37,858 nt of DNA from Octopus sinensis. Its lineage: Eukaryota. Every line of letters starts with the position of its first letter. Position 1 is the first letter of the stretch. A program made the translations under genes and the position numbers. The notes beneath the pieces were generated by a model. The model saw only the letters and a list, made by a program, of their open reading frames with translations. It was not told where the DNA came from and made no database searches. The DNA is taken from positions 1 to 37,858 of the forward strand of contig NW_021836839.1 in NCBI RefSeq assembly GCF_006345805.1, given 5' to 3'. Positions 13,496 to 37,858 of this stretch are shown piece by piece.

Positions 13496-15312
13496 TAAGA
13501 AGAGTGGTCCTGGTGCGCGCACTCGCGTACTCGCGCATCCGCGCTAGCTAGTCGTGACTAGTCGATCCTACAACGACTACCGGTTAATATAGGGCGTAAC
13601 AAATATCAGAAAATCAAAAAAAAAATGTGTGTAATAGGTGTAAAACAACTTCCTATGAACGAATATGAAAAAAAAAATTCGCGCTCGCGAAAGGGGTGTG
13701 GGGGAGAGGCTTCGGAAATTTCCCATCTTCAGTCCACGGCCTTTGAACTAAGAAAAAATAGTGTAATTGGTGTAAAACTACTTGTTCTAAACGAGTATCA
13801 AGAACACACACTCACACATGAATCATAAACTCCGTATTTCGCAAAAAAAAAAAAAATAAAGAGAAGAAATTCTGGAAAAAGTGAAGAAATGTTGGATCTC
13901 ATTCCTTGGTTAAAGCTATTTTAAACATTAAATTTATGCTTTTCTTTGAATAGTTCAGATATATGCAATTCTTTCACTTATTAAGATGCATTTATCAGAA
14001 AAAAAGAGACAGAAAAAATTATTATTGTGTCAATCCTTCCCCTAATTATCCTTTATTAATTAGTTTTGGCGTGTATTTTTTCCCAAATTTATTTTTTCAC
14101 CTTTACAACACTGTTTAGTAAAGCAATTAATTATCTTTATAATTTGCATATTTGACTTATTAATCAAAATTCTCTAGATGTAATATATACTAAGTAATGC
14201 ATCCTTCATTTATGTGTTCCGTTCTGTATTATGCATGCGTGACTGTTTGTATGTAAGTGTGTTTAACTGTGCACATGAATGTGAATATTAAAGAACATAT
14301 TTATTTACTATGATTGTTATTTTCAGAACAAATAAATCTTTTGGCTGTTATGTTATTGATGTTATTATTATTGCTAGTTAAAGGGTGGTGACTTGGCTGA
14401 ATATTTTGAGTCTTGTAGTATGTAGTTGTGTTAGTCAATATTCTGAGTTCAAATCCAACTCATTTCTTTATCATCATTATCGATGGACCACTCAAAGAGG
14501 TATGTATACATTATCATTTTCGTAACATAATTTCTGTAGTATTTCAAGATGTTTCTGACACGTATTTTGATTCACATGGCGGAGATCCAACATTTCTTCA
14601 CTTTTTCCAGAATTTCTTCTCTTTATTTTTTTTTTTTGCGAAATATGATTTTATGATTCATGTGTGAGTGTGTGTTCTTGATACTCGTTTAGAACAAGTA
14701 GTTTTACACCAATTACACTATTTTTTCTTAGTTTAAAGGCCGTGGACTGAAGATGTGAAATTTCCGAAGCCTCTCCCCCACCCCCCTTTCGCGAGCGCGC
14801 ATTTTTTTCATGATAGTCGTTCAGAGCAAGTTGTTTTACACCTATTACGCTGTTTTTGTTTTTGTTTTTGTGCCCGGTTCAGACGCTTTCGGAAATTCCC
14901 GATATAAATATTCCGAGGCCTCTCCCCCACCCCTCTTTCGCGAGAGCGCATTTTTCTTTTGTCATATTCGTTTAGAGCAAGTTGTTTTACACATATTACA
15001 CTATTTTTTTTTTGTTTTGGTGCCCGGGTCAGCTCCTCAGACGCTTTCGGAACTTCCCGATGTGAATTTTCCGAGGCCTCTCCCCCACCCCCCTTTCGCG
15101 TGCGCGAATTTTTTTTTTCATATTCGTTCATAGGAAGTTGTTTTACACCTATTACACACATTTTTTTTTTGATTTTCTGATATTTGTTACGCCCTATATT
15201 AACCCGACTACCTAGCAAAGTAAATGAAACACAAAGTAAAGATCGACTAGCTAGCTCGGATGCGCTAGTACGCGATTGCGCGCACCGGGACCACTCTTCT
15301 TAGGTAGTACCC
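13496..15312. mobile_element. MITE family A, split by the 13582-15204 insertion
   Basis: About 58-bp inverted repeats taagaagagtggtcctggtgcgcgcactcgcgtactcgcgcatccgcgctagctagtc / gactagctagctcggatgcgctagtacgcgattgcgcgcaccgggaccactcttctta. Confidence 0.75.
13582..15204. mobile_element. Non-autonomous DNA transposon with long TIRs and 8-bp TSD (Merlin-, hAT- or MULE-like)
   Basis: Termini ggttaatatagggcgtaacaaatatcagaaaatc / gattttctgatatttgttacgccctatattaacc. TSD cgactacc at 13574-13581 and 15205-15212. Arms are 13582-13900 and 14582-15204, the right one with extra ~110-120-bp subunits. Confidence 0.9.
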
Positions 15313-20057: not shown

Positions 20058-23000
20058 ATGAAAAGAAACAATGTACACCTCACCTCGATGCTCCTACTGA
20101 ACATCAGAGGGCTGCAAACACTCAGTAACAGGACAAAAATCCCGTTCCTGAGAGACTTTGTTGCATGCAATCAAGCCTTATGCATAGCACTTACGGAAAC
20201 GCACCTGAAACCGGACATAGCAGATGCGGAGTTACACATACCACAGTATGCTGTACTACGGACCGACAGAAAAGAAAGGAGTCATGGAGGTGTTGCTATG
20301 TACATCTGTGAGGACCTCACACCCCAGGTCCTCTTGTCATACTCAAACTCGGTGTGTGACACACTAATTGTACATATTAGGCAACTTGATGTAGTTGTGT
20401 GTGCTACATATCGCCCTCCAGATGCCCCAAGCCATGTGGGCAAGTTTGAAGACTGCCTTATAAAAATAGAAGAAGTTCTAACCACATTAGAACAACACAT
20501 AGTGTACTTCTTATGGGAGACTTCAATCTGCCCAATGTCAGATGGCCCGAGGGCCTTTCTCTCCCAGGAATGACAAGATGTGAACGAGGACAGGCGAGGT
20601 CCCTCCTGAACCTCATCAACACCCTGTACATGGAGCAGGTAATACTCCAACCAACCAGGGCAGGTAACACACTGGATCTCTGCTTCACAAATAATATGGA
20701 TCTCATCCATAATGTGAAAGTGACACCGACACTACTCTCGGCCCACAACATGATAGAGCTGACCATGTACGGGCCAAAAGAGAGCACGGACATGCAGCCT
20801 ACAAGAAACCCTCAGAATCTTTCCAGCTTGAACTACCATAAGGCAAACTGGAAACAAATTGAGAAAGAGATCCTCAAACAAAACTGGCCTGAATGTCTCT
20901 CCTCGCCAGACATCGACGTGAAACTTCAACAATTCATGTCTGTAATGCAAGCCATATGCTACAAATGTGTCCCAGAGAGAAAGGCCACTGTACACAAGAA
21001 CAAAATCCCCAGAGAGAGGAAAAATTCTAATGAGACGGCGTACAAAATTTTCAAATCGCCTAAACAAACATTGAAAGCAGTGAAAAGTGAAAAGTCCCTC
21101 CTGAAAATAAACTGTGGAAATCGAAAAATGTCTGCAACTCTCCATGAGAAGGAAAGAGCAGACAAAGAAGCCTGGGCTATAGACAACATAAAATCTAACC
21201 CCAGAGCTTTCTACAGGTATGCCAAAGAAACAGCTACGGTGCACTGTAGAATAGGGCCACTCCTCGAAAAGGATGGCACACTTACAGGAAAACCAATGAG
21301 GGTAAGTGAAATACTGAATGAGCAATTCAAGAGTGTTTTCACTCCACCCCTTGGGCATTTCCAAATCACCAATCCAACTGACTTCTTTACCACTGCAGAT
21401 ATAAAATCAGAGGCGGCGACAATAGATTACATCGATATAAAGGAAGACGATGTAATCAAGGCTATAGATGAAATGAAAACAGACTCAGCTACTGGCCCCG
21501 ATGGATTCCCGGCAATCCTCCTAAAAGCATGTAAGAGAGTCCTAGCAAGACCACTGCATTTCCTCTTTCAGAGCTTCCTTGCAGTTGGCAAACTTCCAAG
21601 AAAACTGAAGGAAGGTAAAATATGCCCCATTCATAAAGGAGGTAGCAGAGCGGAAGCCAAGAAACTATAGACCTATCTCTCTGACCTCACACTCAGCAAG
21701 GTCATGGAACGAATAGTCAGAAGGAAGCTGATCACCTTCCTTGAAGAGAATGACTTGCTGCCCGACACCCAACATGGTTTCCGACCAGGGAGAAGCTGTT
21801 TAACTCAGCTCCTACAACACTATGACTGGGTGCTGAAACGGCTGCTCAACCACTCAAATGTGGAAGTGATATATCTGGACTTTGCAAAGGCCTTTGATAA
21901 AGTCGATCATGGAATGATATGTCACAAACTGCGTAATCTCAACATAGTTGGAAAACTGGGAGAATGGCTTCATGACTTTCTGAAAGGTAGAAGTCAGGTG
22001 GTAGTAGCCATTGGGGCCACTTCCATTAACACGCAAATAGTGAGTGGTGCTCTGCAGGGCACTGTTCTGGGACCACTACTGTTCATAATGGCCCTCTCAG
22101 ACATGCCCTCAGCCACGCAGAGAGCCACGATCACAAGTTATGCAGATGATACAAAAGTTTCACAGGCAATACAGAACCCTGAGGACACTAAACACCTGCA
22201 ATGTGAGCTGGACAAAATATACAAGTGGGCTGAAAAGAATAGCATGCAGTTCAATGCTGAAAAGTTTCAAGCTTTATACTATCAGCATGCAAAACTGAAT
22301 GCAATACCCAATGAATACACTGGACCCGGAGGAATAGCAATCCCAGAGGCACAATCAGTGCATGACCTAGGTATTTACATGAGTGATGACGCGACCTTTC
22401 GTGTACATGTTGCTAAATTGGCAATGAAATGTAGACGACTGGCCGGATGGATCCTCAGAACCTTTAGAACAAGAAACCATGATGGTCCTCTGGAGGACAC
22501 TTGTCCTAAGCCACTTTGACTATTGCTCTCAGTTATGGTCACCATCCAGTGTCAAGTTGATCACAGAGCTCGAGGCGATCCAACGTAGCTACACGAAGAA
22601 GATAGCCTCTATGCAGAATGTAAGCTACTGGGAAAGACTCAAGCGATTAAAACTATATTCCCTGGAACATAGGTGGGAAAGATATGCCATAATATACATC
22701 TGGAAGATCCTGGAGGGACGTGTCCTAAACTTTGGCATCGAGAGTTACGCAAATGCCAGAACTGGGCGCCACTGCGTGGTGCCTAGGACTCCAAACTTGC
22801 CATCAAGATGTAGGACAAGATTCTGTGATAGCCTGGGCTTCCGAGGCCCACAGCTCTTCAATATCCTCCCGAAGAACCTGAGAGACCTGCATGGGGTGGA
22901 TGCAGATGTCTTTAAAATGAAACTGGATCTCTTCCTGTCAGGTGTCCCAGATGAACCAACTTCACGGCAGGAGGTGCAGATGAGGGCAGCTGCATCGAAC

Positions 23001-23135
23001 TCTCTCATGCACCAAATGGCAGTTGCTAAAAAGCTTTCGTGAAGTAAAACCAAGTAGCAACACCAAATGGCGGTGCCCCAGCATGGCCACAGCTCATAAG
23101 CTGAAACTAGAATCAATCAATCAATCAATCAATCA
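20058..23135 (+). mobile_element. Near-full-length LINE ORF2 (APE endonuclease + RT; CR1/L2/Jockey group) with frameshifts and a (TCAA)n tail
   Basis: APE motifs NIRGL, ALTETHL, YRPP, GDFNLP, LDLCF, S-a-HN. RT motifs TGPDGFP, QHGFRPGRSC, YLDFAKAFDKVDH, QGTVLGPLLF, YADDTK, DLGIY. C-terminal LVLSHFDYCSQLWSP and GPQLFNILP. Tail aatcaatcaatcaatcaatcaa. Confidence 0.95.
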
Positions 23136-23724
23136 ACATTTAAAAAGTTTGAGAATCACTGGTATAGGACCGTCATGGTTAGGAAGCAGTTGGTAGAATG
23201 ATTCTGTTAAATTTATAGAGATTCTGTTGGTAGGAGACCAGAAATCTTGGTTTCAAATTAGGAGTGAAGAGAGCTGACAGATGGTGAAATGCAGAAAGAA
23301 GCATCCTTTATTTTATTGATGACCATCATACCTGTAATTCAATGGTGGGTGAATGCCTGCCACTTTGTGATGGTAGGTGTTTTCTTCCAGATGATGTTGA
23401 TATTGTTGTCTAAACAGATGTAATACAGTTGTGTATGAACACCTCACACCTTTTAACATTTTGTATGGCTACAAAGTACTAACGAAGCACTTAATTTAAA
23501 ATGTAGCACTGCCTTATTGATGTTTTTATTCCCCCATCGTTTCCTTTCATTTGTATCCACTTTTTCACACTTTGAACATATTCAAATGAAGTTGGTGTCA
23601 TCCAGAAGTTCCCACAGATATCTAGTCTCAAATAATTACTTTGTATTAAATTCAGTGACAAACATAAAGTGGTTTTCTTTCTCTTCATTGAGCTTATGCA
23701 TGAATTGAACCATCTTCCTAAGTA

Positions 23725-25360
23725 TTTCCAGGAGCATGGTAATCAGGGAGGGCAGTAAGGTAACCAACAAAATCAGGCTCCAAGTGCAAGGAGCATTCCA
23801 TCAATAGAGGTAAATCCTAATAAATGCCTTGAAAAGATGTTTGACAAGTCGCTGTCAGAGGGAATCATTGTCACCAAAATTGTAAAGCTAGCAGAGGAGC
23901 GGCGGATGAGGATTGATAGATCAGGGCTTCCAGGAAAGTTCAGGGCATGGCTCTACCAACACAGACTGCTCCCAAGACTCATATGGTTGCTGACGCTGTA
24001 TGATGCTCCAATGACAAGTGTGGAAAGGGTGGAGAGAAAGATATCTAAATACCTCCGAAGATTGCTAGGAGTTTCCCAAGCTTCACTTCAGTAGGCCTGT
24101 CAATAAGATCTGGAAGGCTACAACTTCCCCTGTCGTATTTACTGGAGGAATTCAAAGTAGCAAAATGTAAAGTAATGGTGTAGAGGAACTCTAAGGACGA
24201 GCTTGGCAGACATGCAGGTATTACCACAAGGTGTGGGTAACTAGCACCGCTGTCGCTCAGGCTGAAGGCATGCTGGAGCTACGCGCCATAATTGGAGCTA
24301 CATGTTGGGGTCGCCAGGGACTTGGCTCTTCCTATTTCCAACAATAGAAGAAAGCAGACACCAAGGAGAGGCGGGTTATGACTCAGAAAGCAATGTGGAA
24401 CCAGGAGGAAGATAAAAGGAAATCTAGAGCTGTCGAGCTGGAATCTCTCGGTGCATGGACTAAATGGGATCTCCCTAAGAGGAAGCTCACATGGACTGAT
24501 CTGTGGAGGCTGGAACCTTTGCACATCTCCTTCCTGCATAGAGCGATGTATGACACACTCCCGATGCCAACAAACCTGCACAGATAAGGTTTGAGGGAAG
24601 ACCAGCTGTGTAGACTTTGTGGGAAAGGGACACTCTGGCACACATCCTGGAAGGGTGCAGAATAACACTTTCTCAAGGCAGATACAAATACTTGCTCACA
24701 CCCTGGAGAAGTAAAGGTGTAAGAAACATCATCACCAAGGGAAGATAACTGCCGCAATTGAGTTCATGAAAGAGGGAGAGAAACCAGTAAAGCCAGCAAA
24801 AGCAATACACAGCTTGCTGCAAGGGTCTCAACAATGGGATATGAAGGTAGACTTAGGGAAGAGATTGCAGTTTCCCCAGGATATCCATACAACCCTGAGG
24901 CCTGATGTGGTCCTGTGGTCTGAAAAGGCCCAGAAAATTATCATAATTGAACGAACAGTTACGTGGGGAGCCGGTTGTAACGAGGCCCATGAACAGAAGT
25001 GTGACAGATATAAGAGACTTCTGCAGGATTGCAGGGAGAAGCGATGGCAGGTATGGATATTCCGAGTGGAGGTTAGCTGTAGGGGATTCTTTGCCCAGTC
25101 GGCATGGAGGATTTCTACTGCAACTTGAATGAGAGGTAAGGAGGGAAGGGTGGCTGTACGCATGATGGGAGAGGCAACTGAAAGAGCCTTTTGGTGGCTT
25201 TGGTGTAAGAGAGAAGATTAACGCTGGAAGGCATGAGGAGTTGAGGAGCAGTGAATTGGCCATCTCTGTTAACCCATCAACAGTAGGGTGTTACGGTTCA
25301 GAGTCAAAACATCCGATGAACGAGGGATAACGTCTGACAACATTGGTTTCTCCTGGACAA
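23725..25360 (+). mobile_element. 5'-truncated, decayed HERO-like non-LTR retrotransposon (RT C-terminus + restriction-like endonuclease)
   Basis: GLPGKFRAWLYQHRLLPRLIWLLTLY, GAWTKWDLP.RKLTW.DLWRLEPLHISFL.RAMYDTLP.PTNL and TTLRPDVVLWSEKAQKIIIIE.TV.W (PD..D/E.K type). The HERO assignment is from recalled family motifs. Confidence 0.8.
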
Positions 25361-25539: not shown

Positions 25540-25712
25540 GCAAAATGATAACCGGTGTTGGTGTATTTGCATCCCTGTTACTTAGCCCTGAAGCAAAAGA
25601 GAGCTATAGGTTGCTGCTAATCAGACAGAAAAGGTACCACACATAAAGACAAAATCGAGGAGGAGCCCCAGCATGGTCACAGCCTCATGACTGAAACATG
25701 TAGAAGAGAGAA
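25540..25712 (+). mobile_element. Degenerate SINE 3' half
   Basis: accggtgttggtgtatttgcatccctgttacttagc ... ccccagcatggtcacagcctcatgactgaaaca resembles the SINE 3' end. Confidence 0.6.
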
Positions 25713-28700
25713 AGAAAAAGAAAGAGAAAAAAGAAGAGAGGAATAGAAAAATAGAAGAAAGAAAAGGAAAATTGAGAGAGAACTATAGAGAAGAAAAAAA
25801 GAGAAACGAAACAGAGAATGAGAGAGAAAAGATAAAGAGAATGAGATTGGAAAAAGAAAACGAGAGAGAAAAGAAAGAGAGGAAGAAAGAGAAAAATGAA
25901 AGAGTGAGAGAGAGGAACAAGGATAAAAAGAAAACGAGAGGGAAAAAAAGGAGAAAAAAGCGAGAGAGCAAGAAAAGAAAGAGAGAGAGATAAAGAAATT
26001 AGAGGAAGAAAGAGAGGAATGAAAGAGTGAGAGAGAGGAAGAAGGATAAAAAGAAAACGAGAGGGAGAAAGAAGGAGAAAAAAACGAGAGAGCGAAAATA
26101 GAAAGAGAGAGAGATAAAGAAATTAAAGGAAGAAAGAGAGGAATGAAAGAGTGAGAGAGAGGAAGAAGGATAAAAAGAAAACGAGAGGGAGAAAGAAGGA
26201 GAAAAAAACGAGAGAGTGGAAATAGAAAGAGAGAGAGATAAAGAAATTAGAGGAAGAAAGAGAGGAATGAAAGAGTGAGAGAGAGGAAGAAGGATAAAAA
26301 GAAAACGAGAGGGAGAAAGAAGGTGAAAAAAGCGAGAGAGCGAAAATAGAAAGAGAGAGAGATAAAGAAATTAGAGGAAGAAAGAGAGGAATGAAAGAGT
26401 GAGAGAGAGGAAGAAGGATAAAAAGAAAACGAGAGGGAGAAAGAAGGAGAAAAAAACGAGAGAGAGAGAAAAGAAAGAGAGAGAAAGAAACGAGAGGAAG
26501 AAAGAGTGAGAGAGAGGAAGAAGAATGAAGAGGAAACGAGAGGGAGAAAGAAGGAGAAAAAAGCGAGAGAGCGAGGAAAGAAAGAGAGAGAAAAAGAAAC
26601 GAGAGAAGAAAAGAGAAATGAAAGAGTGAGAGAGAGGACGAAGAATGAAAAGGAAACGAGAGGGAGAAAGGAGGAGAAAAAAGCGAGAGAGCGAGAAAAG
26701 AAAGAGAGAGAAAAAGAAACGAGAGGAAGAAAGAGAGAAATGAAAGTGTGAGAGAGAGGAAGAAGGATAAAAAGAAAACGAGTGGGAGGGAGAAGGAGAA
26801 AAAAGTGAGAGAGCGAGAAAAGAAAGAGAGAGAGAAAAAGAAATGAGAGGAAGAAAGAGGAAGAAGAATGAAAAGGAAACGAGAGGGAGGGAGAAGGAGA
26901 AAAAAGTGAGAGAGCGAGAAAAGAGAGAGAAAAAAAGAAAGAGAGAAATGAAAGAGTGAGAGAGAGGAAGAAGAATGAAGAGGAAACGAGAGGGAGAAAG
27001 ACGGAGAAAAAAGCGAGAAAAGAAAGAGAGAGAAAAAGAAATAAGAGGAAGAAAGAAAGAAATGAAAGAGTGAGAGAGAGGAAGAAGGATAAAAAGAAAA
27101 CAAGAGGGAGAAAGAAGGAGAAAAAAAGCGAGAGGGCGAGAAAAGAAAGAGAGAGAAAGAAACGAGAGGAAGAAAGAGAGAAATGAAAGAGTGAGAGAGA
27201 GGAAGAAGAATGAAGAGGAAACGAGAGGGAGAGAGAAAGAGAAAAATGCGAGAGAGCGAGAAAAGAAAGAGAGAGAGATAAAGAAATTAGAGGAAGAAAG
27301 AGAGGAATGAAAGAGTGAGAGAGAGGAACAAGGATAAAAAGAAACGAGAGGAAGAAAGAGAAGACGAAAGGGAGAGAGAAAAAGAAAGAGAAAAAGACAA
27401 TGAGGAAATGAGAGAAAGTGAGAACAGACAAAGAAAACGAGCGAAAGAGAGAAAAGAAAATGATAGAGAGAGAGAGAGAAAGGAAACATAGAGAGAAAGA
27501 AAGAAAAGGAAAAGAAAAAGAGAGATAGGGAGAAGGAAATCCAGAAAATAAAAAGAGAGAGAAAAGAAGCAGAGAGGGAGAGAGCGAGAATAGAAAAAGA
27601 GAAAGAGGGAGAGGAAGAGAGAAAGATGGAAGATAAGAGAAGAAAAAGGTACTGAGAGAAATAAAGAGAGAAAATGGGAGAGAGAGAGAGAGGAAGAAAG
27701 AGAAAAAACAAACACTGAAAGAGAGAGAAATGAGAAAGAGAGGGATAAAGAGAATGAGAGAAAAGAAAGAGGGAGAAAGAGAGAAAAGAAAGGGAGAAGG
27801 CAAGAGAGGAGAGAAAAGAAAAAAGTAAGTCCCTTAAAGGGAGAAAAGGGAAAGAGGGAAAGAAGAGAAAAAGGAAATGACAAAGAGACAGATAGAAATA
27901 GAGGGAGAGGGAGGAAGAGAGAAAAGGAAATTGAGAGAGAGAGAGGAAGAGAGAAGAGAAAAATTGCCAGAGAAAAGAGATAACAGAGAGAAAGAGGAAG
28001 AGAGGAAAGAAAGAGAGAGATAAAAGGAAGCGAGTAGGGGAGAGAGAAAGAGGGAAAAGAAAAGGAGAGAGATTAAGAAGAGAGAATAGAAAAAGAGAGA
28101 AAAGTAAAGCAGGAGAGAAAGGTAAAAGAGCGGGGGAGAAGGAGAGAAGAGAAAAGAGAGGGGGAGAAAGAAGGAGGGAAAAGGGGAAAAAGCAAGTGAG
28201 AGATAAGAATAGGAGAGGAAGAGAAAGAGAAAAGAGACAGAGAGGGAAAGAGGGGAATATAGGAGAGAAAAGAGAGTGGGAGATAGAGAGAGAGGAAGAA
28301 AGATAGAAAAGAGTGAGAGAGAGAGAACAAAGATTAAGACACATAGAGAGAGAAAGATAGAAAATAAATTGTGAGAGTGTGAGAGGAGAAGAAAGAGAGA
28401 AAATGAAAAAGAAAGGGCATCAAAGAAAGAGAAAAGTAAAAGAGAAAGAGGAAGAAAGATAGAAAAGGCAAAGAGAAGCAGAGAGAGAGAGATAAATGTA
28501 AAAGAGAAAGAGAGACGAAAAAGAAAAAGGTTGGGTGCAAGAGAGAAAGGAAGAAGTGAAAGAGATAGAGAGAGAAAGAAAGAGAGTAAAGTAATAGAGA
28601 GAGAGATAAAGAAAGAGAAATGGAAAAGATAGAAAGAGAAAAAAAGAGAGAAACAGAGAAAAGAATGAGAGAGGAAAAGTGAGAGGGAGAAGAAAAGGGA

Positions 28701-28917
28701 AAGAAATGAAAGAGAGAGAGAGAGAAATTGATAAATAGAGAAAGATAAGAGAAAAAAGAAAAAGAGAAAGAGGAAGGAAATAAGAGAGAGAAAGAGAGAG
28801 TAAAAGAGACACAAAGAGAGAAAGAGAAAGAAAGAGAGAAAAGAAAGAAAATGAAAGAGGAAAGAAAACGAGAAAGAGAGTGAGAGACAAAGAGAGAAAA
28901 GAGAGAGAGAGAGAAAA
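25713..28917. repeat. About 3.2-kb purine-rich (GA) tract with a 124-bp higher-order minisatellite
   Basis: Plus strand is mostly A/G. gaggaatgaaagagtgag recurs at 26014, 26138, 26262 and 26386. Confidence 0.95.
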
Positions 28918-29115: not shown

Positions 29116-29481
29116 GTAAGTTGAGAATCAATTAAAATCTGCAGATGTGTTTTTGTTTGTAAATTTGTTGCAATTGCAGACACAGGTTCAATATCCAAAC
29201 AGGCCAGAGTTGTGGGACAACAGCACAACAGCAGACTAGCAAACAACAAGAAGCTTCTGTTTAGTCATCGATCCAATTCATTAGTCATTATTCAATCATA
29301 ACAATCCCGAATATGATGATGATAACGATGACGGTATTGATGATGTCGATCATGATGATGGTGTTGTTGATGATGATGATGATGGAGGAGATGATGATGA
29401 TGATGATGATGTTTCGTCTGAAAGCCAAAACAATTAGGTGTTTAATGTAACTTAGTCAATGTTTCTATCTTTTACTCTCAG

Positions 29482-29635
29482 CCGTCGTCTTCAAGCCGTG
29501 GAACTCTTACTATCTCGGGGCAGCGAGATAAACGGAAAGAGGTATGATGGCAGGACTCCTCTCCATTTGGCTGCAAACTTATCTCCGGAATGGACAGATG
29601 GTGTGAAAGAATTAATGAAACACAGAGCTCTTGAG
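29482..29635 (+). CDS. Ankyrin-repeat gene, third coding exon (gene probably continues beyond the window)
   Basis: Acceptor ttttactctcag, phase 2 matched (AG|C = Ser). RRLQAVELLLSRGSEINGKRYDGRTPLHLAANLSPEWTDGVKELMKHRALE, then donor |gttagt. Confidence 0.9.
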
Positions 29636-29698
29636 GTTAGTGACTATATATATGTGTGTGTGCGTGTGTGTATGTGTGTCTGTGTACTTATATATATG

Positions 29699-29742
<44 letters not shown>

Positions 29743-29989
29743 ATATATACAAGTAAATGTATGGATGTATATATAATGTAAATTGTGGTGTGCATATGTT
29801 AGTGTTTCTCTTCATTCATATTATATTCCGAAATAATCCTAATCTTCTCCGAAAGGTTTTTCTCGATACTTTCCTAACAATTTATCCACTTCTTGAAAAA
29901 TTACGAGGAAACAAAAGATACTCTTGTGAAATTTTACTGAACTCTTCTCCCGACATTTGGGGCACACTTATATAGGTACGTATATAAAA

Positions 29990-33262
<3,273 letters not shown>

Positions 33263-34270
33263 TATATGCCCTTGGTAGCACAAACAACATCCCTCACTAG
33301 CTATGCTGATGACACAAAGGTAGCACAGGCAATCAAAAACCCAGCGATGCTGACCTTTTACAACAAGATCTGGATGCCATATACAAATGGGCTGAAGACA
33401 CAACATGCAATTAATGCTGGTAAATTTCAAGCCTTACAATATCAAGCTGTAAACACATATACATTACAACACAACTATACTGGTCCAGGAGGGATCGAAA
33501 TCCCAGTATCGAAATCAATACGGGACCTGGGGATAGACATGAGTGACGATGCATATCTTTTCTTCACACATCGCGAAGGTGGCGACAATGTGCAGACGAC
33601 TCACTGGCTGGATCCTGAGGACATCCGGACAAGAGACTGCGAGACCATGTGACACTATGGAGGACATTTGTCCTAAGCCGCCTGACTACTACTGCTCCAA
33701 CTGTGGTCACGCATAGTGTCAACTAACCACAGAGCTTGAGACAATCCAAAGACATTTCACCAAGAGGATTTCCACCATGAAAGAAAAGAACTATTGGGAG
33801 AGGCTTAGGAACTCAATTTGTACTCCTTGGAACGAAGACGAGAGAGATATGCAGTGATATACATATGAAAATCCTGGAGGGACTAGCACCAAATTTTGGA
33901 ATTGAGAGCTGTTCCAATCCCCGTACAGTCGTCACTGTGTGGTGCCAAAGGTCCCGTCTTCCACATCCAGAGCAGATACTGTAATAGCCTGGGGTTCAGG
34001 GGCCCTCAGTGTTCAACAAACTGCCAAGAAAACTAAGAGATCTACATGATGCGGATGTGGACATTTTCAAAAAACATCTAGACAAGCTGCTTTCCGGGAT
34101 CCCAGATGAACCCACTGCAAGGTACGAAGGTAACCTAAGGGCAGCAGCTACAAACTCTCTCTTAGATCAATGGCCAGCCACGGCAAACTGGACTTAGAGA
34201 GGGTAGCAACAAGGGCGGTGCCCAGCTGGCCTCAGCCGGATGGCTGAAACAAGTAAAAGAGTAAAAGAGT
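33263..34270 (+). mobile_element. 5'-truncated, decayed LINE related to 20058-23135, embedded in (TA)n
   Basis: SYADDTKVAQAIKNP, NAGKFQAL, YTGPGGIEIP, RDLGIDMSDD and FNKLPRKLRDLH..DVDIFK..LD are colinear with the RT C-terminus of the longer copy. Tail gctgaaacaagtaaaagagtaaaagag. Confidence 0.9.
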
Positions 34271-34374
34271 AATATATATACATATATATATATACATATA
34301 TATATATACATATATATATATACACATTATATTATATACATTATATATAACTATATATACATATATATATATAC

Positions 34375-34414
<40 letters not shown>

Positions 34415-34640
34415 ATAATTAATCATATAGGGAGGCAAAAAAATTTTGTAGAATTCTTTTGCCCCCAGCGGCCTAGTGGGAAAAAATTATAGTCATAACC
34501 CATTTTTAATTCAATATCACAATCAAGGAACGGCCATAATAGGCCATTCACCCACTAGAAATAACAGCCAAAAAGCTTCAACACCGCAAAATAACTAATT
34601 CTGTAAACCAGGAGAAAATTAAAGAAACATTTACCCTGAA

Positions 34641-34744
34641 ATTCCTTATACGATGCACCGTTTCGTCTACTGTTTAATGGTAAACAACCTGATTAAATAA
34701 ATCAAGCCAATCTACCATAGGCCCTTAGATTCATCAGTAAGAAT
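34641..34744 (-). ncRNA. Type I hammerhead ribozyme motif
   Basis: Reverse complement of the same unit. tcatcag at 34731-34737 and tacgatgcaccgtttcg upstream on the + strand. Confidence 0.72.
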
Positions 34745-35128
34745 AGCCAAATCGGAACAGATATTTTTCACGAGGCATTCCCGTCCATGCCTCGCCAATA
34801 TCGACCTAAAATTTTCAAATCGTCGCACTCGCGCAAAATTATCGGCAGCAAATAAATATAAGCCGCCGATTCCATTACGGAACTAACCAGAAAATTCATA
34901 ATTAATCAATATAGGGAGGCAAAAAAATTTTGTAGAATTCTTTTGCCCCCACGCTAGTGGGAAAAAAATTAAATAGTCATAAAAACCATTTTTAAGTTCA
35001 ATATCACAATCAAGGAACGGCCATAATAGGCCATTCACCCACTAGAAATAACAGCCAAAAAGCTTCAACAACCGCAAAATAACATTAATTCTGTAAACCG
35101 GAGAAAATTAAAAAAACATTTACCCTGA

Positions 35129-35234
35129 ATTCCTATACGATGCACCGTTTCGTCTAACTGTTTATGGTAAACCAACCTGATTAAATTAAATCAAGCCAAT
35201 CTACCATAGGCCCTTAGATTCATCAGTAAGGAAT
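35129..35234 (-). ncRNA. Type I hammerhead ribozyme motif
   Basis: tcatcag at 35220-35226, tacgatgcaccgtttcg intact, minor indels. Confidence 0.7.
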
Positions 35235-35630
35235 AGCCAAATCGGAACAGATATTTTTCACGAGGCATTCCCGTCCATGCCTCGCCAATATCTGACCTAA
35301 ATTTTCAAATCGTCGCACTCGCGCGCCAAATTTATCGGCAGCAATAAATATAAGCCGCCGATTCCATTACGGAACTAACCAGAAAATTCATAATTAATCA
35401 ATATAGGGAGGCAAAAAAATTTGTGTAGAATTCTTTTGCCCCCAGCGGCCTAGTGGGAAAAAAATTAAATAGTCATAAACCATTTTAAGTTCAATATCAC
35501 AATCAAGGACGGCCATAATAGGCCATTCACCCACTAGAAATAACAGCCAAAAAGCTTCAACAACAAAATAACAAAGCAAATAACATTAATTCTGTAAACC
35601 AGGAGAAAATAAAAAAACATTTACCCTGAA

Positions 35631-35739
35631 ATTCCTTATACGATGCACCGTTTCGTCTACTGTTTAATGGTAAACCAACCTGATTAAATTAAATCAAGCC
35701 ATCTATCTACCATAGGCCCTAGATTCATCAGTAAGGAAT
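35631..35739 (-). ncRNA. Type I hammerhead ribozyme motif
   Basis: tcatcag at 35725-35731, stem I and stem III intact. Confidence 0.72.
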
Positions 35740-36117
35740 AGCCAAATCGGAACAGATATTTTTCACGAGGCATTCCCGTCCATGCCTCGCCAATATCTGA
35801 CCTAAAATTTTCAAATCGTCGCACTCGCGCCAAATTATCGGCCAGCAAATAAAGACCCGCCGATTCCATTACGGAACTAACCAGAAAATTCATAATTAAT
35901 CAATAAGGGAGGCAAAAAATTTTGTAGAATTCTTTTGCCCCCAGCGGCCTAGTGGAAAAAAATTAAATAGTCATAAACCATTTTAAGTTCAATATCACAA
36001 TCAAGGAACGGCCATAATAGCCATTCACCCACTAGAAATAACAGCCAAAAAGCTTCAACCGCAAAATAACATTAATTCTGTAAACCAGGAGAAAATTAAA
36101 AAAACATTTACCCTGAA

Positions 36118-36220
36118 ATTCCTTATACGATGCACCGTTTCGTCTACTGTTAATGGTAAACCAACCTGATTAAATTAAATCAAGCCAATCTACCATAGGC
36201 CCTTAGATATCAGAAGGAAT
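36118..36220 (-). ncRNA. Hammerhead motif with disrupted core (mutation or read error)
   Basis: Stem III and GAAA present, but the core reads gatatcag instead of gattcatcag on the + strand. Confidence 0.45.
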
Positions 36221-36701
36221 AGCCAAATCGGAACAGATATTTTTCACGAGGCATTCCCGTCCATGCCTCGCCAATATCTGACCTAAAATTTTCAAATCGT
36301 CGCACTCGCGCCAAATTTATCGGCAGCAAATAAATATAAGCCGCCGATTCCATTACGGAACTAACTATTTTGCGGTTGAAGCTTTTTGGCTGTTATTTCT
36401 AGTGGGTGAATGGCCTATTATGGCCGTTCCTTGATTGTGATATTGAACTTAAAAATGGTTTATGACTATTTAATTTTTTTCCCACTAGGCCGCTGGGGGC
36501 AAAAGAATTCTACAAAATTTTTTTGCCTCCCTATATTGATTAATTATGAATTTTCTGGTTAGTTCCGTAATGGAATCGGCGGCTTATATTTATTGCTGCC
36601 GATAAATTTGGCGCGAGTGCGACGATTTGAAAATTTTAGGTCAGATATTGGCGAGGCATGGACGGGAATGCCTCGTGAAAAATATCTGTTTCGATTTGGC
36701 T

Positions 36702-36806
36702 ATTCCTTACTGATGAATCTAAGGGCCTATGGTAGATTGCTTGATTAATTTAATCAGGTTGGTTTACCATTAAACAGTAGACGAAACGGTGCATCGTATA
36801 AGGAAT
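36702..36806 (+). ncRNA. Type I hammerhead ribozyme motif
   Basis: Same fold. Core at 36710-36716, GAAA at 36783-36786, cleavage predicted after 36798. Confidence 0.78.
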
Positions 36807-37188
36807 TTCAGGGTAATGTTTTTTTAATTTTCTCCTGGTTTACAGATTAATTTATTGCGGTTGAAGCTTTTTGGCTGTTATTTCTAGGGGTGAATGGCCT
36901 ATTATGGCCGTTCCTTGATTGGTGATATTGACTTAAAAATGGTTTATGACTATTTAATTTTTTTCCCACCTAGGCCGCTGGGGGCAAAAGAATTCTACAA
37001 AATTTTTTTGCCTTCCTATATTGATTAATTATGAATTTTCTGGTTAGTTCCGTAATGGAATCGGCGGCTTATATTTATTTGCTGCCGATATAAATTTGCG
37101 CGAGTGAGACGATTTGAAAATTTTAGGTCAGATATTGGCGAGGCATGGACGGGAATGCCTCGTGAAAAATATCTGTTCCGATTTGGCT

Positions 37189-37295
37189 ATTCCTTACTGA
37201 TGAATCTAAGGGCCTATGGTAGATTGGCTTGATTTAATTTAATCAGGTTGGTTTACCATTAAACAGTAGACGAAACGGTGCATCGTATAAGGAAT
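37189..37295 (+). ncRNA. Type I hammerhead ribozyme motif (cleanest copy)
   Basis: Stem I attcctta/taaggaat (8 bp). Core CTGATGA at 37197-37203, 68-nt extended stem II, GAAA at 37272-37275, stem III acgg-tgca-tcgt, GUA triplet with cleavage predicted after 37287. The 10.1-11.1 pair is A.C instead of G-C. Confidence 0.8.
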
Positions 37296-37677
37296 TTCAG
37301 GGTAAATGTTTTTTTAATTTTCTCCTGGTTTACAGAATTAATGTTATTTTGCGGTTGAAGCTTTTTGGCTGTTATTTCTAGTGGGTGAATGGCCTATTAT
37401 GCCGTTCCTTGATGTGATATTGACTTAAAAATGGTTTATGACTATTTAATTTTTTTCCCACTAGGCCGCTGGGGGCAAAAGAATTCTACAAAATTTTTTT
37501 TTGCCTCCCTATATTGATTAATTATGAATTTTCTGTTAGTTCCGTAATGGAATCGGCGGCTTATATTTATTTGCTGCCGATAAATTGGCGCGAGTGCGAC
37601 GATTTGAAAATTTTAGGTCAGATATGGCGAGGCATGGACGGGAATGCCTCGTGAAAAATATCTGTTCCGATTTGGCT

Positions 37678-37780
37678 ATTCCTTACTGATGACTAAGGGC
37701 CTATGGTAATTGGCTTGATTTAATTTAATCAGGTTGGTTTACCATTAAACAGTAGACGAAACGGTGCATCGTATAAGGAT
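37678..37780 (+). ncRNA. Type I hammerhead ribozyme motif (small deletion at the stem II base)
   Basis: Core ctgatga at 37686-37692, gaaac at 37758-37762, gta at 37771-37773. Confidence 0.65.
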
Positions 37781-37858
37781 TTTCAGGGTAAATTTTTTTT
37801 AATTTTCTCCTGGTTTACAGAATTAATGTTATTTTGCGGTTGAAGCTTTTTGGCTGTT

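What the first reader, a model, noticed from the sequence alone, without database searches (positions are those of the whole stretch)
34414..37858. The ~487-bp 'satellite' is a tandem hammerhead-ribozyme array (retrozyme-like)
Seen: each monomer has, on one strand, attcctta-CTGATGA-[66-68 nt]-GAAAC-ggtgcatc-GTA-taaggaat. That is a complete type I hammerhead with an 8-bp stem I, the conserved core, a 4-bp stem III and a GUA cleavage triplet. There are seven copies in the window, six with an intact core. Established: tandem type I hammerheads define non-LTR retrozymes and ribozyme satellites in animals (newt satellite 2, Schistosoma SM-alpha, cricket pDo500, bivalve/coral/axolotl retrozymes), which yield monomer-length linear and circular RNAs, and hammerheads also occur in Penelope-like elements. 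Inference: this is a non-coding, self-cleaving retroelement whose transcript would be cut into ~487-nt monomers and could circularise. I do not know of a description of this family and cannot confirm novelty. Caveat: position 10.1-11.1 is A.C rather than G-C.
Basis: partly seen in the sequence, partly recalled or inferred. Interest (0 to 1): 0.95.

Follow-up and report, generated by a model that had tools for sequence, protein, structure and literature searches.

The report
Octopod hammerhead-ribozyme tandem repeat (retrozyme)
The ~487-bp repeat at the end of this probably octopod window carries a genuine-looking type I hammerhead ribozyme in each unit and fits the known class of animal "non-LTR retrozymes", so it is a new family member in an unreported host group and not a new kind of element.

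Summary
Window 34411-37858 is a ~487-bp tandem repeat with seven hammerhead (HH) motifs: six keep CUGAUGA...GAAAC and five pass a full type I descriptor. Rfam finds no hammerhead, even at E<=10. A covariance model built only from four published, experimentally cleaving retrozyme hammerheads, run with filters off, ranks six array sites as the six best hits in the whole window (15-24 bits; best background 11.6). The core halves match the mussel retrozyme ribozyme except for G10.1->A and a ~58-nt insertion in loop 2. A single domain is predicted to hide its core. Two real adjacent units fold, unconstrained, into a double hammerhead with a 12-bp shared stem III. The monomer is non-coding, 37% GC and strongly structured on the HH strand only (z = -5.9). 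The minus block's 3' end sits in a (TA)n tract. That, and the inverted arrangement, match published Penelope-like-element integration. LINE homologues point to an octopod. Catalysis, circular RNA and mobility are untested, and A.C at 10.1-11.1 should weaken cleavage. Verdict: new member of a known kind, moderate interest.

The parts
34411..36365 (-). Block A: 4.0 monomers of the ~487-bp repeat, hammerhead strand = minus strand. It runs from monomer position 249 (at 36365) round to position 242 (at 34411), i.e. four units less about 6 nt.
   Evidence: TRF; blastn of consensus against window; monomer alignment
36353..37858 (+). Block B: 3.1 monomers, hammerhead strand = plus strand. It starts at monomer position 43 and is cut off by the window end.
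   Evidence: TRF; blastn
36353..36366 (.). Head-to-head (5'-to-5') junction of the two blocks, with about 13 nt of overlap or microhomology. It is asymmetric (monomer position 249 meets position 43), so it is not a simple foldback palindrome.
   Evidence: sequence
36702..36806 (+). Hammerhead domain, fully intact; predicted cleavage after A36798.
   Evidence: custom model 24.4 bits
37189..37295 (+). Hammerhead domain, fully intact; predicted cleavage after A37287.
   Evidence: custom model 22.4 bits
37678..37781 (+). Hammerhead domain with a 2-nt deletion at 10.1-10.2 and one change in the stem I 3' strand; cleavage site after A37773.
   Evidence: custom model 15.4 bits; fails the strict descriptor
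35631..35739 (-). Hammerhead domain with intact core and stems; cleavage after the base at 35639.
   Evidence: custom model 21.5 bits
35128..35234 (-). Hammerhead domain with intact core; stem I reduced to 4 bp by a 1-nt deletion; cleavage after 35136.
   Evidence: custom model 15.6 bits
34641..34745 (-). Hammerhead domain with intact core; stem I reduced to 6 bp by a 1-nt deletion; cleavage after 34649.
   Evidence: custom model 17.4 bits
36118..36220 (-). Hammerhead domain with a broken core (CTGAT-ATC in place of CTGATGAATC); the GAAAC, stem III and GTA parts are intact (site after 36126).
   Evidence: not hit by the pattern, the descriptor or the custom model
34272..34417 (.). (TA)n microsatellite abutting the RNA-sense 3' end of block A; the presumed integration target.
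   Evidence: TRF; sequence; PLE microsatellite insertion bias (PMC8557442)

Best explanation
This is a tandem array of a non-coding, ~487-nt non-LTR retrozyme in a probably octopod genome. Each unit encodes a type I hammerhead. It has an 8-bp stem I and the canonical CUGAUGA / GAAA / A15.1-U16.1 / GUA core. Helix II is unusually long at 65-70 nt: 4 bp, an internal loop, then a 19-bp hairpin. The stem III strand ACGGUGCAUCGU is quasi-palindromic. Shown here: the array, the motif, its recognition by a model of known retrozyme hammerheads, and the predicted folds. Inferred: multimeric transcripts of the hammerhead strand fold so that two neighbouring ribozymes share a 12-bp stem III, forming a double hammerhead. 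Each then cuts after GUA and releases ~487-nt monomers with 5'-OH and 2',3'-cyclic phosphate ends. A host RtcB-type tRNA ligase circularises them. The lone monomer hides its core in an alternative helix (UGAUG:CAUCG), which protects the circle from re-cleavage. New copies are probably made by a reverse transcriptase of a Penelope-like element (PLE). Priming would be from nicks in (TA)n, running round the circle or along a multimer, with priming from both sides of the break giving the two opposed blocks. The A.C at 10.1-11.1 probably lowers the cleavage rate.
For: Tandem array and motif: (6 pattern hits against 0.08 expected; 5 descriptor hits against 0.01 per shuffled window). A model built only from four published in-vitro-active retrozyme hammerheads (sequences from PMC7229834 supplement) ranks six array sites as the top six hits in the whole window, 15.4-24.4 bits, full-length and in register; best background hit 11.6 bits. 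The ribozyme halves ACUGAUGA[A/G]UCU and GUAGACGAAACG match the mussel retrozyme hammerhead. Double hammerhead: co-folding gives -79.9 against 2 x -34.3 kcal/mol. Unconstrained MFE folds of real dimers 36695-37300 (+) and 35127-35745 (-) pair the two stem III strands about 489 nt apart, leave both cores unpaired and form stem I crosswise. Monomer: circular MFE -148.8 kcal/mol, z = -5.9, 62% paired; antisense only -104.7; GC 37%; no ORF above 69 aa. Class features and precedents: PMC7229834: low GC, self-paired circRNAs, dimeric hammerheads, a U.U mismatch at the base of helix II in an active axolotl retrozyme, RtcB circularisation. Monomer lengths of 51-972 bp and PLE origin: bioRxiv 10.64898/2026.07.22.740005. 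PLE insertion bias for microsatellites and inverted 5'-truncated copies: PMC8557442. Penelope families in Octopus vulgaris: PMC13282606. Octopod origin: LINE reverse transcriptase is 67% identical to an Octopus protein and 59% to an Argonauta hians protein.
Against: No Rfam hammerhead family matches, even at E<=10 on a 126-nt slice. The 10.1-11.1 pair, the most conserved after A15.1-U16.1, is A.C. PMC3088659 states that U.U is the most active mispair there, so A.C should be worse. The single-domain MFE is not the hammerhead fold (-34.3 against -31.3 kcal/mol). Only one locus is seen, so mobility is not shown. No relative was found in any searchable collection, so no covariation test was possible. 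Within the array the hammerhead is no better conserved than the rest. No PLE is present in the window. Two of seven ribozymes are damaged. The custom model's E-values are rough, and its spacer length was chosen to allow a long helix II.
Confidence: 0.68

Rival explanations
1. An ordinary satellite DNA descended from a retrozyme or a PLE terminal repeat, whose hammerhead is now a dead relic. The G10.1->A change disabled it, and the array has since grown only by DNA-level unequal crossing-over, without RNA processing or retrotransposition.
For: A.C at the most conserved stem II pair in every copy. No Rfam hit. The hammerhead domain is no better conserved than the rest of the monomer. Two copies carry further damage. 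Only one locus is seen.
Against: A natural retrozyme hammerhead with a mismatch at this position (U.U, axolotl Ax353) cleaves, especially as a dimer (PMC7229834). The quasi-palindromic stem III, the double-hammerhead MFE and the strand-specific structure (z = -5.9) are all intact. Block A is an almost exact integer number of units ending in a microsatellite, which suggests a cDNA insertion more than slippage.
Confidence: 0.24
2. A chance hammerhead-like motif in an unrelated satellite repeat.
For: A lenient descriptor does give rare false positives (2 of 200 shuffled windows), which scales to hundreds per multi-gigabase genome. No Rfam support.
Against: The real motif is much stricter than the descriptor: an 8-bp stem I, 23 bp in helix II and a palindromic stem III. 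It lies in a repeat of retrozyme size and composition. It scores 15-24 bits on a model of known retrozyme ribozymes, against at most 11.6 for background. It shares 12 of 13 non-core positions with the mussel ribozyme.
Confidence: 0.03
3. Not an independent element, but terminal pseudo-LTR sequence of an autonomous Penelope-like element whose coding part lies beyond the window end. Alternatively, the inverted two-block layout is a long-read assembly artefact.
For: PLE terminal repeats carry hammerheads and form tandem/inverted structures (PMC8557442; PMC4209133). The array runs off the window. The copies differ mainly by 1-nt indels, an error profile typical of noisy long reads.
Against: Seven consecutive ~487-bp units with no ORF is not the PLE layout, where repeats are separated by a reverse transcriptase/endonuclease ORF about 3 kb long. 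No GIY-YIG or PLE reverse transcriptase is seen in the window. The junction is asymmetric (position 249 meets position 43), unlike a foldback chimera.
Confidence: 0.05

Closest known systems
Metazoan non-LTR retrozymes (Cervera & de la Pena 2020, PMC7229834), in particular the Mytilus galloprovincialis Mg353 retrozyme
   Same: Tandem, non-coding, AT-rich repeats of a few hundred bp with one type I hammerhead per unit and a highly self-paired predicted RNA. The ribozyme halves ACUGAUGA-N-UCU and GUAGACGAAACG are identical to the mussel ribozyme apart from position 10.1.
   Different: The monomer is longer (487 against 350-390 bp) and shows no similarity outside the ribozyme. Helix II is 65-70 nt, against 4 bp plus a 5-nt loop. 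Position 10.1 is A, not G. Stem III is longer and quasi-palindromic. The host is a cephalopod, for which I found no retrozyme description.
Newt satellite 2 / axolotl retrozymes Rtz_331 and Rtz_353 (dimeric hammerheads)
   Same: A palindromic stem III region, so two neighbouring ribozymes in a multimeric transcript form the active double hammerhead. Rtz_353 also has a mismatch at the base of helix II (U.U) and a GUA cleavage triplet.
   Different: Stem III here can also form a 4-bp hairpin. The mismatch is A.C. Helix II is greatly extended. There is no sequence similarity outside the core.
Hammerheads in the pseudo-LTRs of Penelope-like elements (Cervera & de la Pena 2014, PMC4209133)
   Same: Type I topology, enlarged helix II, an irregular or unpaired base at the 5' end of helix II, a palindromic helix III and proposed dimeric action. 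The integration context (microsatellite target, inverted copies) matches PLE behaviour.
   Different: PLE hammerheads are minimal (helix I 4-5 bp, helix II 6-8 bp) and flank a reverse transcriptase/GIY-YIG ORF. Here helix I is 8 bp, helix II is much longer and there is no ORF.
Rfam Hammerhead_1 (RF00163) loci annotated in cephalopod genomes, e.g. 235 in Architeuthis dux (PMC6962438)
   Same: Type I hammerheads are already on record in cephalopod genomes.
   Different: This family is not detected by the Rfam models, so it would not be among such annotations. Those loci were not characterised as retrozymes.

Membership tests
Hammerhead ribozyme, type I | Conserved core C3-U4-G5-A6-N7-G8-A9, G12-A13-A14, A15.1-U16.1 and H17 (not G) | tested here: met
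   CUGAUGA...GAAA-C...G-U-A present in 6 of 7 units; the seventh has a broken CUGAUGA.
Hammerhead ribozyme, type I | Three helices around the core, with the ends in helix I and helices II and III closed | tested here: met
   Helix I 8 bp, helix II 4 bp + internal loop + 19 bp, helix III 4 bp. Five units pass the descriptor, against 0.01 hits per shuffled window.
Hammerhead ribozyme, type I | Watson-Crick 10.1-11.1 pair (normally G-C) at the base of helix II | tested here: not met
   A.C in the copies that keep this position. A U.U mismatch is tolerated in natural ribozymes (PMC3088659, PMC7229834), but I found no report of A.C.
Hammerhead ribozyme, type I | Match to curated Rfam covariance models (Hammerhead_1, HH9, HH10, etc.) | tested here: not met
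   No hammerhead family at gathering score or at E<=10, even on a 126-nt slice.
Hammerhead ribozyme, type I | Match to a covariance model of experimentally active type I retrozyme hammerheads that allows a long loop 2 | tested here: met
   Model R1, filters off: the top six hits in the window are six array sites, 15.4-24.4 bits, E 7e-5 to 0.019 (rough); best background hit 11.6 bits.
Hammerhead ribozyme, type I | Loop 1 - loop 2 tertiary contacts | tested here: inconclusive
   Helix II has an internal loop 5 positions from the core, where loop 2 normally sits, but no conserved contact nucleotides could be assigned. The mussel ribozymes also lack most of them.
Hammerhead ribozyme, type I | Site-specific Mg2+-dependent self-cleavage | not testable with these tools
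   Needs in vitro transcription of monomer and dimer constructs.
Non-LTR retrozyme | [quoted passage not shown] | tested here: met
   Period 485-487 bp, 7.1 units. This is within the 51-972 bp range of the 2026 survey and slightly above the 150-450 bp of PMC7229834.
Non-LTR retrozyme | Non-coding; no LTR, PBS or PPT; GC below 50% | tested here: met
   Longest ORF 69 aa, with frames inconsistent between copies. GC 37%. No flanking long repeats or other copies in the window. PBS and PPT were not specifically searched.
Non-LTR retrozyme | Monomer RNA predicted to be stable and highly self-paired | tested here: met
   Circular MFE -148.8 kcal/mol, z = -5.9, 62% paired; antisense -104.7.
Non-LTR retrozyme | Expressed as monomer-length linear and circular RNAs | not testable with these tools
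   No transcriptome search was available. The ORF-handle search of public assemblies found nothing.
Non-LTR retrozyme | Dispersed multi-locus copies, with target-site duplications where present | not testable with these tools
   Only one locus is visible. One end lies in (TA)n and the other is beyond the window. There is no eukaryotic genome DNA search; scans of metagenome, prokaryote and viral contigs were empty.
Non-LTR retrozyme | Co-occurrence with Penelope-like elements in the host genome | tested here: inconclusive
   No PLE in this window. The literature reports about 30 Penelope families in Octopus vulgaris, and the window is octopod by LINE homology.
Penelope-like element (autonomous) | ORF with a telomerase-like reverse transcriptase and a GIY-YIG endonuclease between hammerhead-bearing pseudo-LTRs | tested here: not met
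   No such ORF in or next to the array. The neighbouring reverse transcriptase belongs to an APE-type LINE.

The most novel reading that the evidence does not exclude
This is the founding example of a cephalopod retrozyme lineage whose hammerhead is a real structural variant. It would be an obligate dimer with a ~30-bp-equivalent helix II inserted into loop 2 and an A.C (possibly protonated A+.C wobble) in place of G10.1-C11.1, and it would still be active in vivo. Because Rfam models miss it, covariance-model annotation would be undercounting retrozymes and ribozyme-derived circular RNAs in animal genomes. The near-integer four-unit block ending in (TA)n, next to an inverted block, would be a footprint of rolling-circle reverse transcription with priming from both sides of the break.
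Probability: 0.3. Interest if true: 0.55.

Novelty: new member of a known kind. Interest (0 to 1): 0.36.

Why it matters
If active, this would extend ribozyme-made small circular RNAs to cephalopods, a group studied closely for its unusual RNA biology and repeat-rich genomes. It would also add a natural hammerhead that tolerates a non-canonical 10.1-11.1 pair and a very long helix II. In practical terms, curated Rfam models can miss bona fide-looking retrozyme ribozymes, while a simple descriptor or a model trained on retrozymes finds them. The locus also preserves an integration footprint: the 3' end lies in a microsatellite, the unit count is near-integer, and a partner block is inverted. 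That bears on the open question of how non-LTR retrozymes are mobilised. It does not reveal a new kind of element.

Tried and rejected
1. Rfam at gathering score on the whole window, at E<=10 on the array, and at E<=10 on a 126-nt slice gave no hammerhead. The only hits were chance-level matches to RalA, mir-5728 and ES056 hairpins.
2. Exact-match scans with two invariant monomer segments (21 and 26 nt) over metagenome, prokaryotic genome and viral contigs found nothing. These collections are not expected to hold cephalopod DNA.
3. I used the monomer's longest stop-free frame (68 aa) as a handle to find spurious ORFs called in other copies in public assemblies. No candidate was found.
4. Conservation of the hammerhead against the rest of the monomer among the seven copies showed no difference: substitutions 1.7% vs 1.2%, indels 2.4% in both. 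This is uninformative, because the copies are recent and the differences look like sequencing-type indels.
5. A tRNA/SINE-like origin is not supported: ARAGORN found no tRNA in the window.
6. Dependence on the adjacent LINE is not supported: the monomer shows no similarity to either LINE copy or its 3' end.
7. The first covariance-model alignment, with a spacer in only one sequence, was misaligned by MAFFT and discarded.
8. Similarity of the whole monomer to the published coral, mussel and axolotl retrozymes is limited to the ribozyme halves.
9. I looked for a PLE in the window. There are only APE-type LINE domains, a weak ankyrin-like ORF and a sub-threshold PD-(D/E)XK-like match.
Full report
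OBSERVATION

The last 3.4 kb of the window is a tandem repeat. Tandem Repeats Finder reports 34414-36365 (period 487, 4.0 copies) and 36366-37858 (period 485, 3.1 copies). blastn of the consensus monomer places the array at 34411-37858 and finds no other copy in the window. The pattern CTGATGA-N(55-80)-GAAAC occurs six times, only in the array, against 0.08 expected from shuffles. The invariant ACGAAACGGTGCATCGTA occurs seven times and marks the predicted cleavage sites: after 36798, 37287 and 37773 on the plus strand, and after 36126, 35639, 35136 and 34649 on the minus strand.

Each motif reads AUUCCUUA-CUGAUGA-[helix II]-GAAA-CGGUGCAUCG-UA-UAAGGAAU. That gives an 8-bp helix I and the full conserved core. 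Helix II is in register but opens with A10.1.C11.1. Helix III is A-U, C-G, G-C, G.U with loop UGCA, and the cleavage triplet is GUA.

- Four motifs lie on the minus strand and three on the plus strand.
- The core-to-GAAAC spacing is 65-70 nt.
- Only five copies pass a full descriptor and three are fully intact. One copy has a broken core (CTGAT-ATC), one has a 2-nt deletion at the base of helix II, and two have 1-nt indels in helix I.

A lenient hammerhead descriptor hit 2 of 200 shuffled windows, a mean of 0.01 hits per window, against 5 real hits.

IS IT A HAMMERHEAD?

Rfam is negative. No hammerhead family matches at gathering score on the whole window, at E<=10 on the array, or at E<=10 on a 126-nt slice.

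To test whether the long helix II explains this, I took four retrozyme hammerheads whose self-cleavage was shown in vitro: coral Amil224, mussel Mg353, and axolotl Ax353 and Ax330 (PMC7229834, supplementary Table 2). I gave each a 58-nt spacer in loop 2, designed so that every spacer column holds A, C, G and T once and so carries no information. I then built a covariance model with the hammerhead structure and searched the whole window on both strands with filters off.

The six best hits are six of the array's sites. They score 24.4, 22.4, 21.5, 17.4, 15.6 and 15.4 bits, with E from 7e-5 to 0.019 (rough calibration). All are full-length and in the correct register, and in the three alignments shown only the 10.1-11.1 pair is flagged as non-standard. 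The best hit outside the array scores 11.6 bits. The copy with the broken core is not found. A model that has never seen this sequence therefore recognises it as a retrozyme-type hammerhead. The Rfam miss is most simply explained by the 65-70-nt helix II, although I could not run the Rfam models with filters off.

blastn against the published retrozymes shows similarity only in the ribozyme. ACTGATGA[A/G]TCT and GTAGACGAAACG (12 of 12) match the mussel ribozyme, and the rest of the monomer is unrelated. Relative to that mollusc ribozyme, this one has a G-to-A change at 10.1 and about 58 nt inserted in loop 2.

HOW IT PROBABLY WORKS

A single 107-nt domain is very stable (-34.3 kcal/mol, z = -4.9). 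However, its minimum-energy fold pairs core UGAUG with CAUCG of the helix III strand. The hammerhead fold is 3 kcal/mol worse.

The helix III strand ACGGUGCAUCGU is a quasi-palindrome, with a homodimer energy of -17.5 kcal/mol. Two domains co-fold into a double hammerhead at -79.9, against -68.6 kcal/mol for two separate monomers.

Unconstrained folds of two real dimer-length stretches, 36695-37300 (+) and 35127-35745 (-), both give this result. The two helix III strands, about 489 nt apart, pair with each other over 12 bp. Both CUGAUGA and GAAA segments stay unpaired. Helix I forms crosswise between the two units. This is the topology established for double hammerheads, and it is the mode described for newt and axolotl retrozymes and proposed for PLE hammerheads (PMC7229834; PMC4209133).

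The whole monomer is non-coding: the longest ORF is 69 aa and frames differ between copies. It is 37% GC. On the hammerhead strand only, it is predicted to be very structured: circular MFE -148.8 kcal/mol, z = -5.9, 62% paired, against -104.7 for the antisense strand.

From these results and the published retrozyme pathway I infer the following, none of which is shown here:
- Multimeric transcripts cleave through double hammerheads.
- The ~487-nt monomers are circularised by an RtcB-type ligase.
- The monomeric circle resists re-cleavage because its lone ribozyme misfolds.

The A.C at 10.1-11.1 is the main argument against robust activity. That pair is the most conserved after A15.1-U16.1, and U.U is reported to be the most active mispair there (PMC3088659). 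The axolotl Ax353 ribozyme has U.U and still cleaves well as a dimer.

ARCHITECTURE AND CONTEXT

The minus-strand block runs from monomer position 249 (at 36365) round to position 242 (at 34411). That is four units less about 6 nt. Its RNA-sense 3' end joins the (TA)n tract at 34272-34417 through an AT-rich part of the monomer.

The plus-strand block starts at monomer position 43 and overlaps the other block by about 13 nt (36353-36365). The two blocks therefore meet 5'-to-5' at an asymmetric junction. A foldback sequencing chimera would be symmetric, so this is less likely to be that artefact.

PLEs are reported to prefer microsatellite targets and to form tandem/inverted structures, with an inverted 5'-truncated copy next to the element (PMC8557442). 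A 2026 preprint derives animal retrozymes from PLE terminal repeats. The layout here fits PLE-type integration primed from both sides of a break in (TA)n, possibly by rolling-circle copying. This is inference from one locus.

Just upstream, a 5'-truncated APE-type LINE (33268 to about 34262, +) is itself inserted in the same (TA)n region. It shares no sequence with the monomer. No PLE coding sequence is present in the window.

The closest named relatives of the LINE reverse transcriptase are from Octopus (67% identity) and Argonauta hians (59%). The next named relatives, at about 45%, are crustacean. The window is therefore very probably octopod.

COMPARISON WITH WHAT IS KNOWN, AND NOVELTY

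The class is well established. It was first seen as the newt satellite 2 hammerhead and was defined as non-LTR retrozymes in corals, mussels, axolotl and many invertebrate phyla (PMC7229834). It has since been surveyed with monomer lengths of 51-972 bp. The features I could test are met, apart from the canonical 10.1-11.1 pair and the Rfam match; the loop-loop contacts and co-occurrence with PLEs were inconclusive. Expression, catalysis, dispersal and target-site duplications could not be tested.

I found no description of retrozymes in cephalopods. The giant squid genome paper lists 235 Rfam Hammerhead_1 loci without characterising them. This family would not be among such hits.

It is best filed as a new member of a known kind. 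It has three unusual traits: a very long helix II, A.C at 10.1-11.1, and invisibility to Rfam.

LIMITS

No eukaryotic genome or transcriptome could be searched by DNA, and scans of the available collections were empty. So there is no independent copy, no covariation evidence and no expression evidence. Copies within the array differ mostly by 1-nt indels, and the ribozyme is no better conserved than the rest, which says nothing about selection. The custom model's E-values are approximate. All folds are thermodynamic predictions.

Noticed in passing
window 29993-33267: A 3.27-kb (TA)n tract (about 1670 copies, 82% matches). A 5'-truncated LINE begins directly at its 3' edge (33268), and (TA)n resumes after the LINE at 34272-34417. 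The LINE fragment and the ribozyme array are therefore both nested in one very large TA microsatellite.
   Followed up: partly
window 20058-23042 (+), tail to about 23136: A nearly full-length APE-type LINE (Exo_endo_phos_2 + RVT_1) split into four overlapping ORFs by frameshifts, followed by an (AATC)6.5 tail at 23111-23136. Its closest named relatives are Octopus and Argonauta 'jockey-like' reverse transcriptases.
   Followed up: partly
window 25705-28917: About 3.2 kb of purine-rich (AG/GAA) low-complexity DNA, organised in higher-order tandem units of about 120-124 bp (8.3 copies at 89% identity at 25851-26859). It gives long spurious ORFs on the minus strand.
   Followed up: no
window 14752-15176: A 158-bp tandem repeat (2.8 copies, 84% matches) of unknown nature. 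The best non-array hit of the custom hammerhead model (11.6 bits, E 0.21) lies at its edge (15171-15244), but I treat that as background.
   Followed up: no
window 24766-25128 (+): A 120-aa ORF with a sub-threshold match to a PD-(D/E)XK restriction-endonuclease domain (BsuBI_PstI_RE, E 0.0014). From memory it resembles the restriction-like endonuclease at the C-terminus of R2/R4-Dong-type LINEs, so it may be another retroelement remnant.
   Followed up: no
window 29459-29776 (+): A 105-aa ORF with a single ankyrin-repeat match (Ank, E 9e-6), just upstream of the big (TA)n tract. It could be an exon fragment or a pseudogene piece.
   Followed up: no
window 34411-37858 (all monomers): The copies differ more by 1-nt indels (2.4% of cells) than by substitutions (1.2-1.7%), largely in homopolymer runs. 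There is also one 12-16-nt duplication in the unit at 35136-35638. This looks like long-read sequencing noise, so the 'damaged' ribozymes may be intact in the real genome.
   Followed up: partly
window 34431-34466 and equivalent positions in each unit: Each monomer contains a perfect 15-bp hairpin (GGGGGCAAAAGAAUUCUACAAAAUUUUUUUGCCUCC). It produced weak chance-level Rfam hits (mir-5728, RalA). It is part of the rod-like body of the predicted RNA.
   Followed up: no
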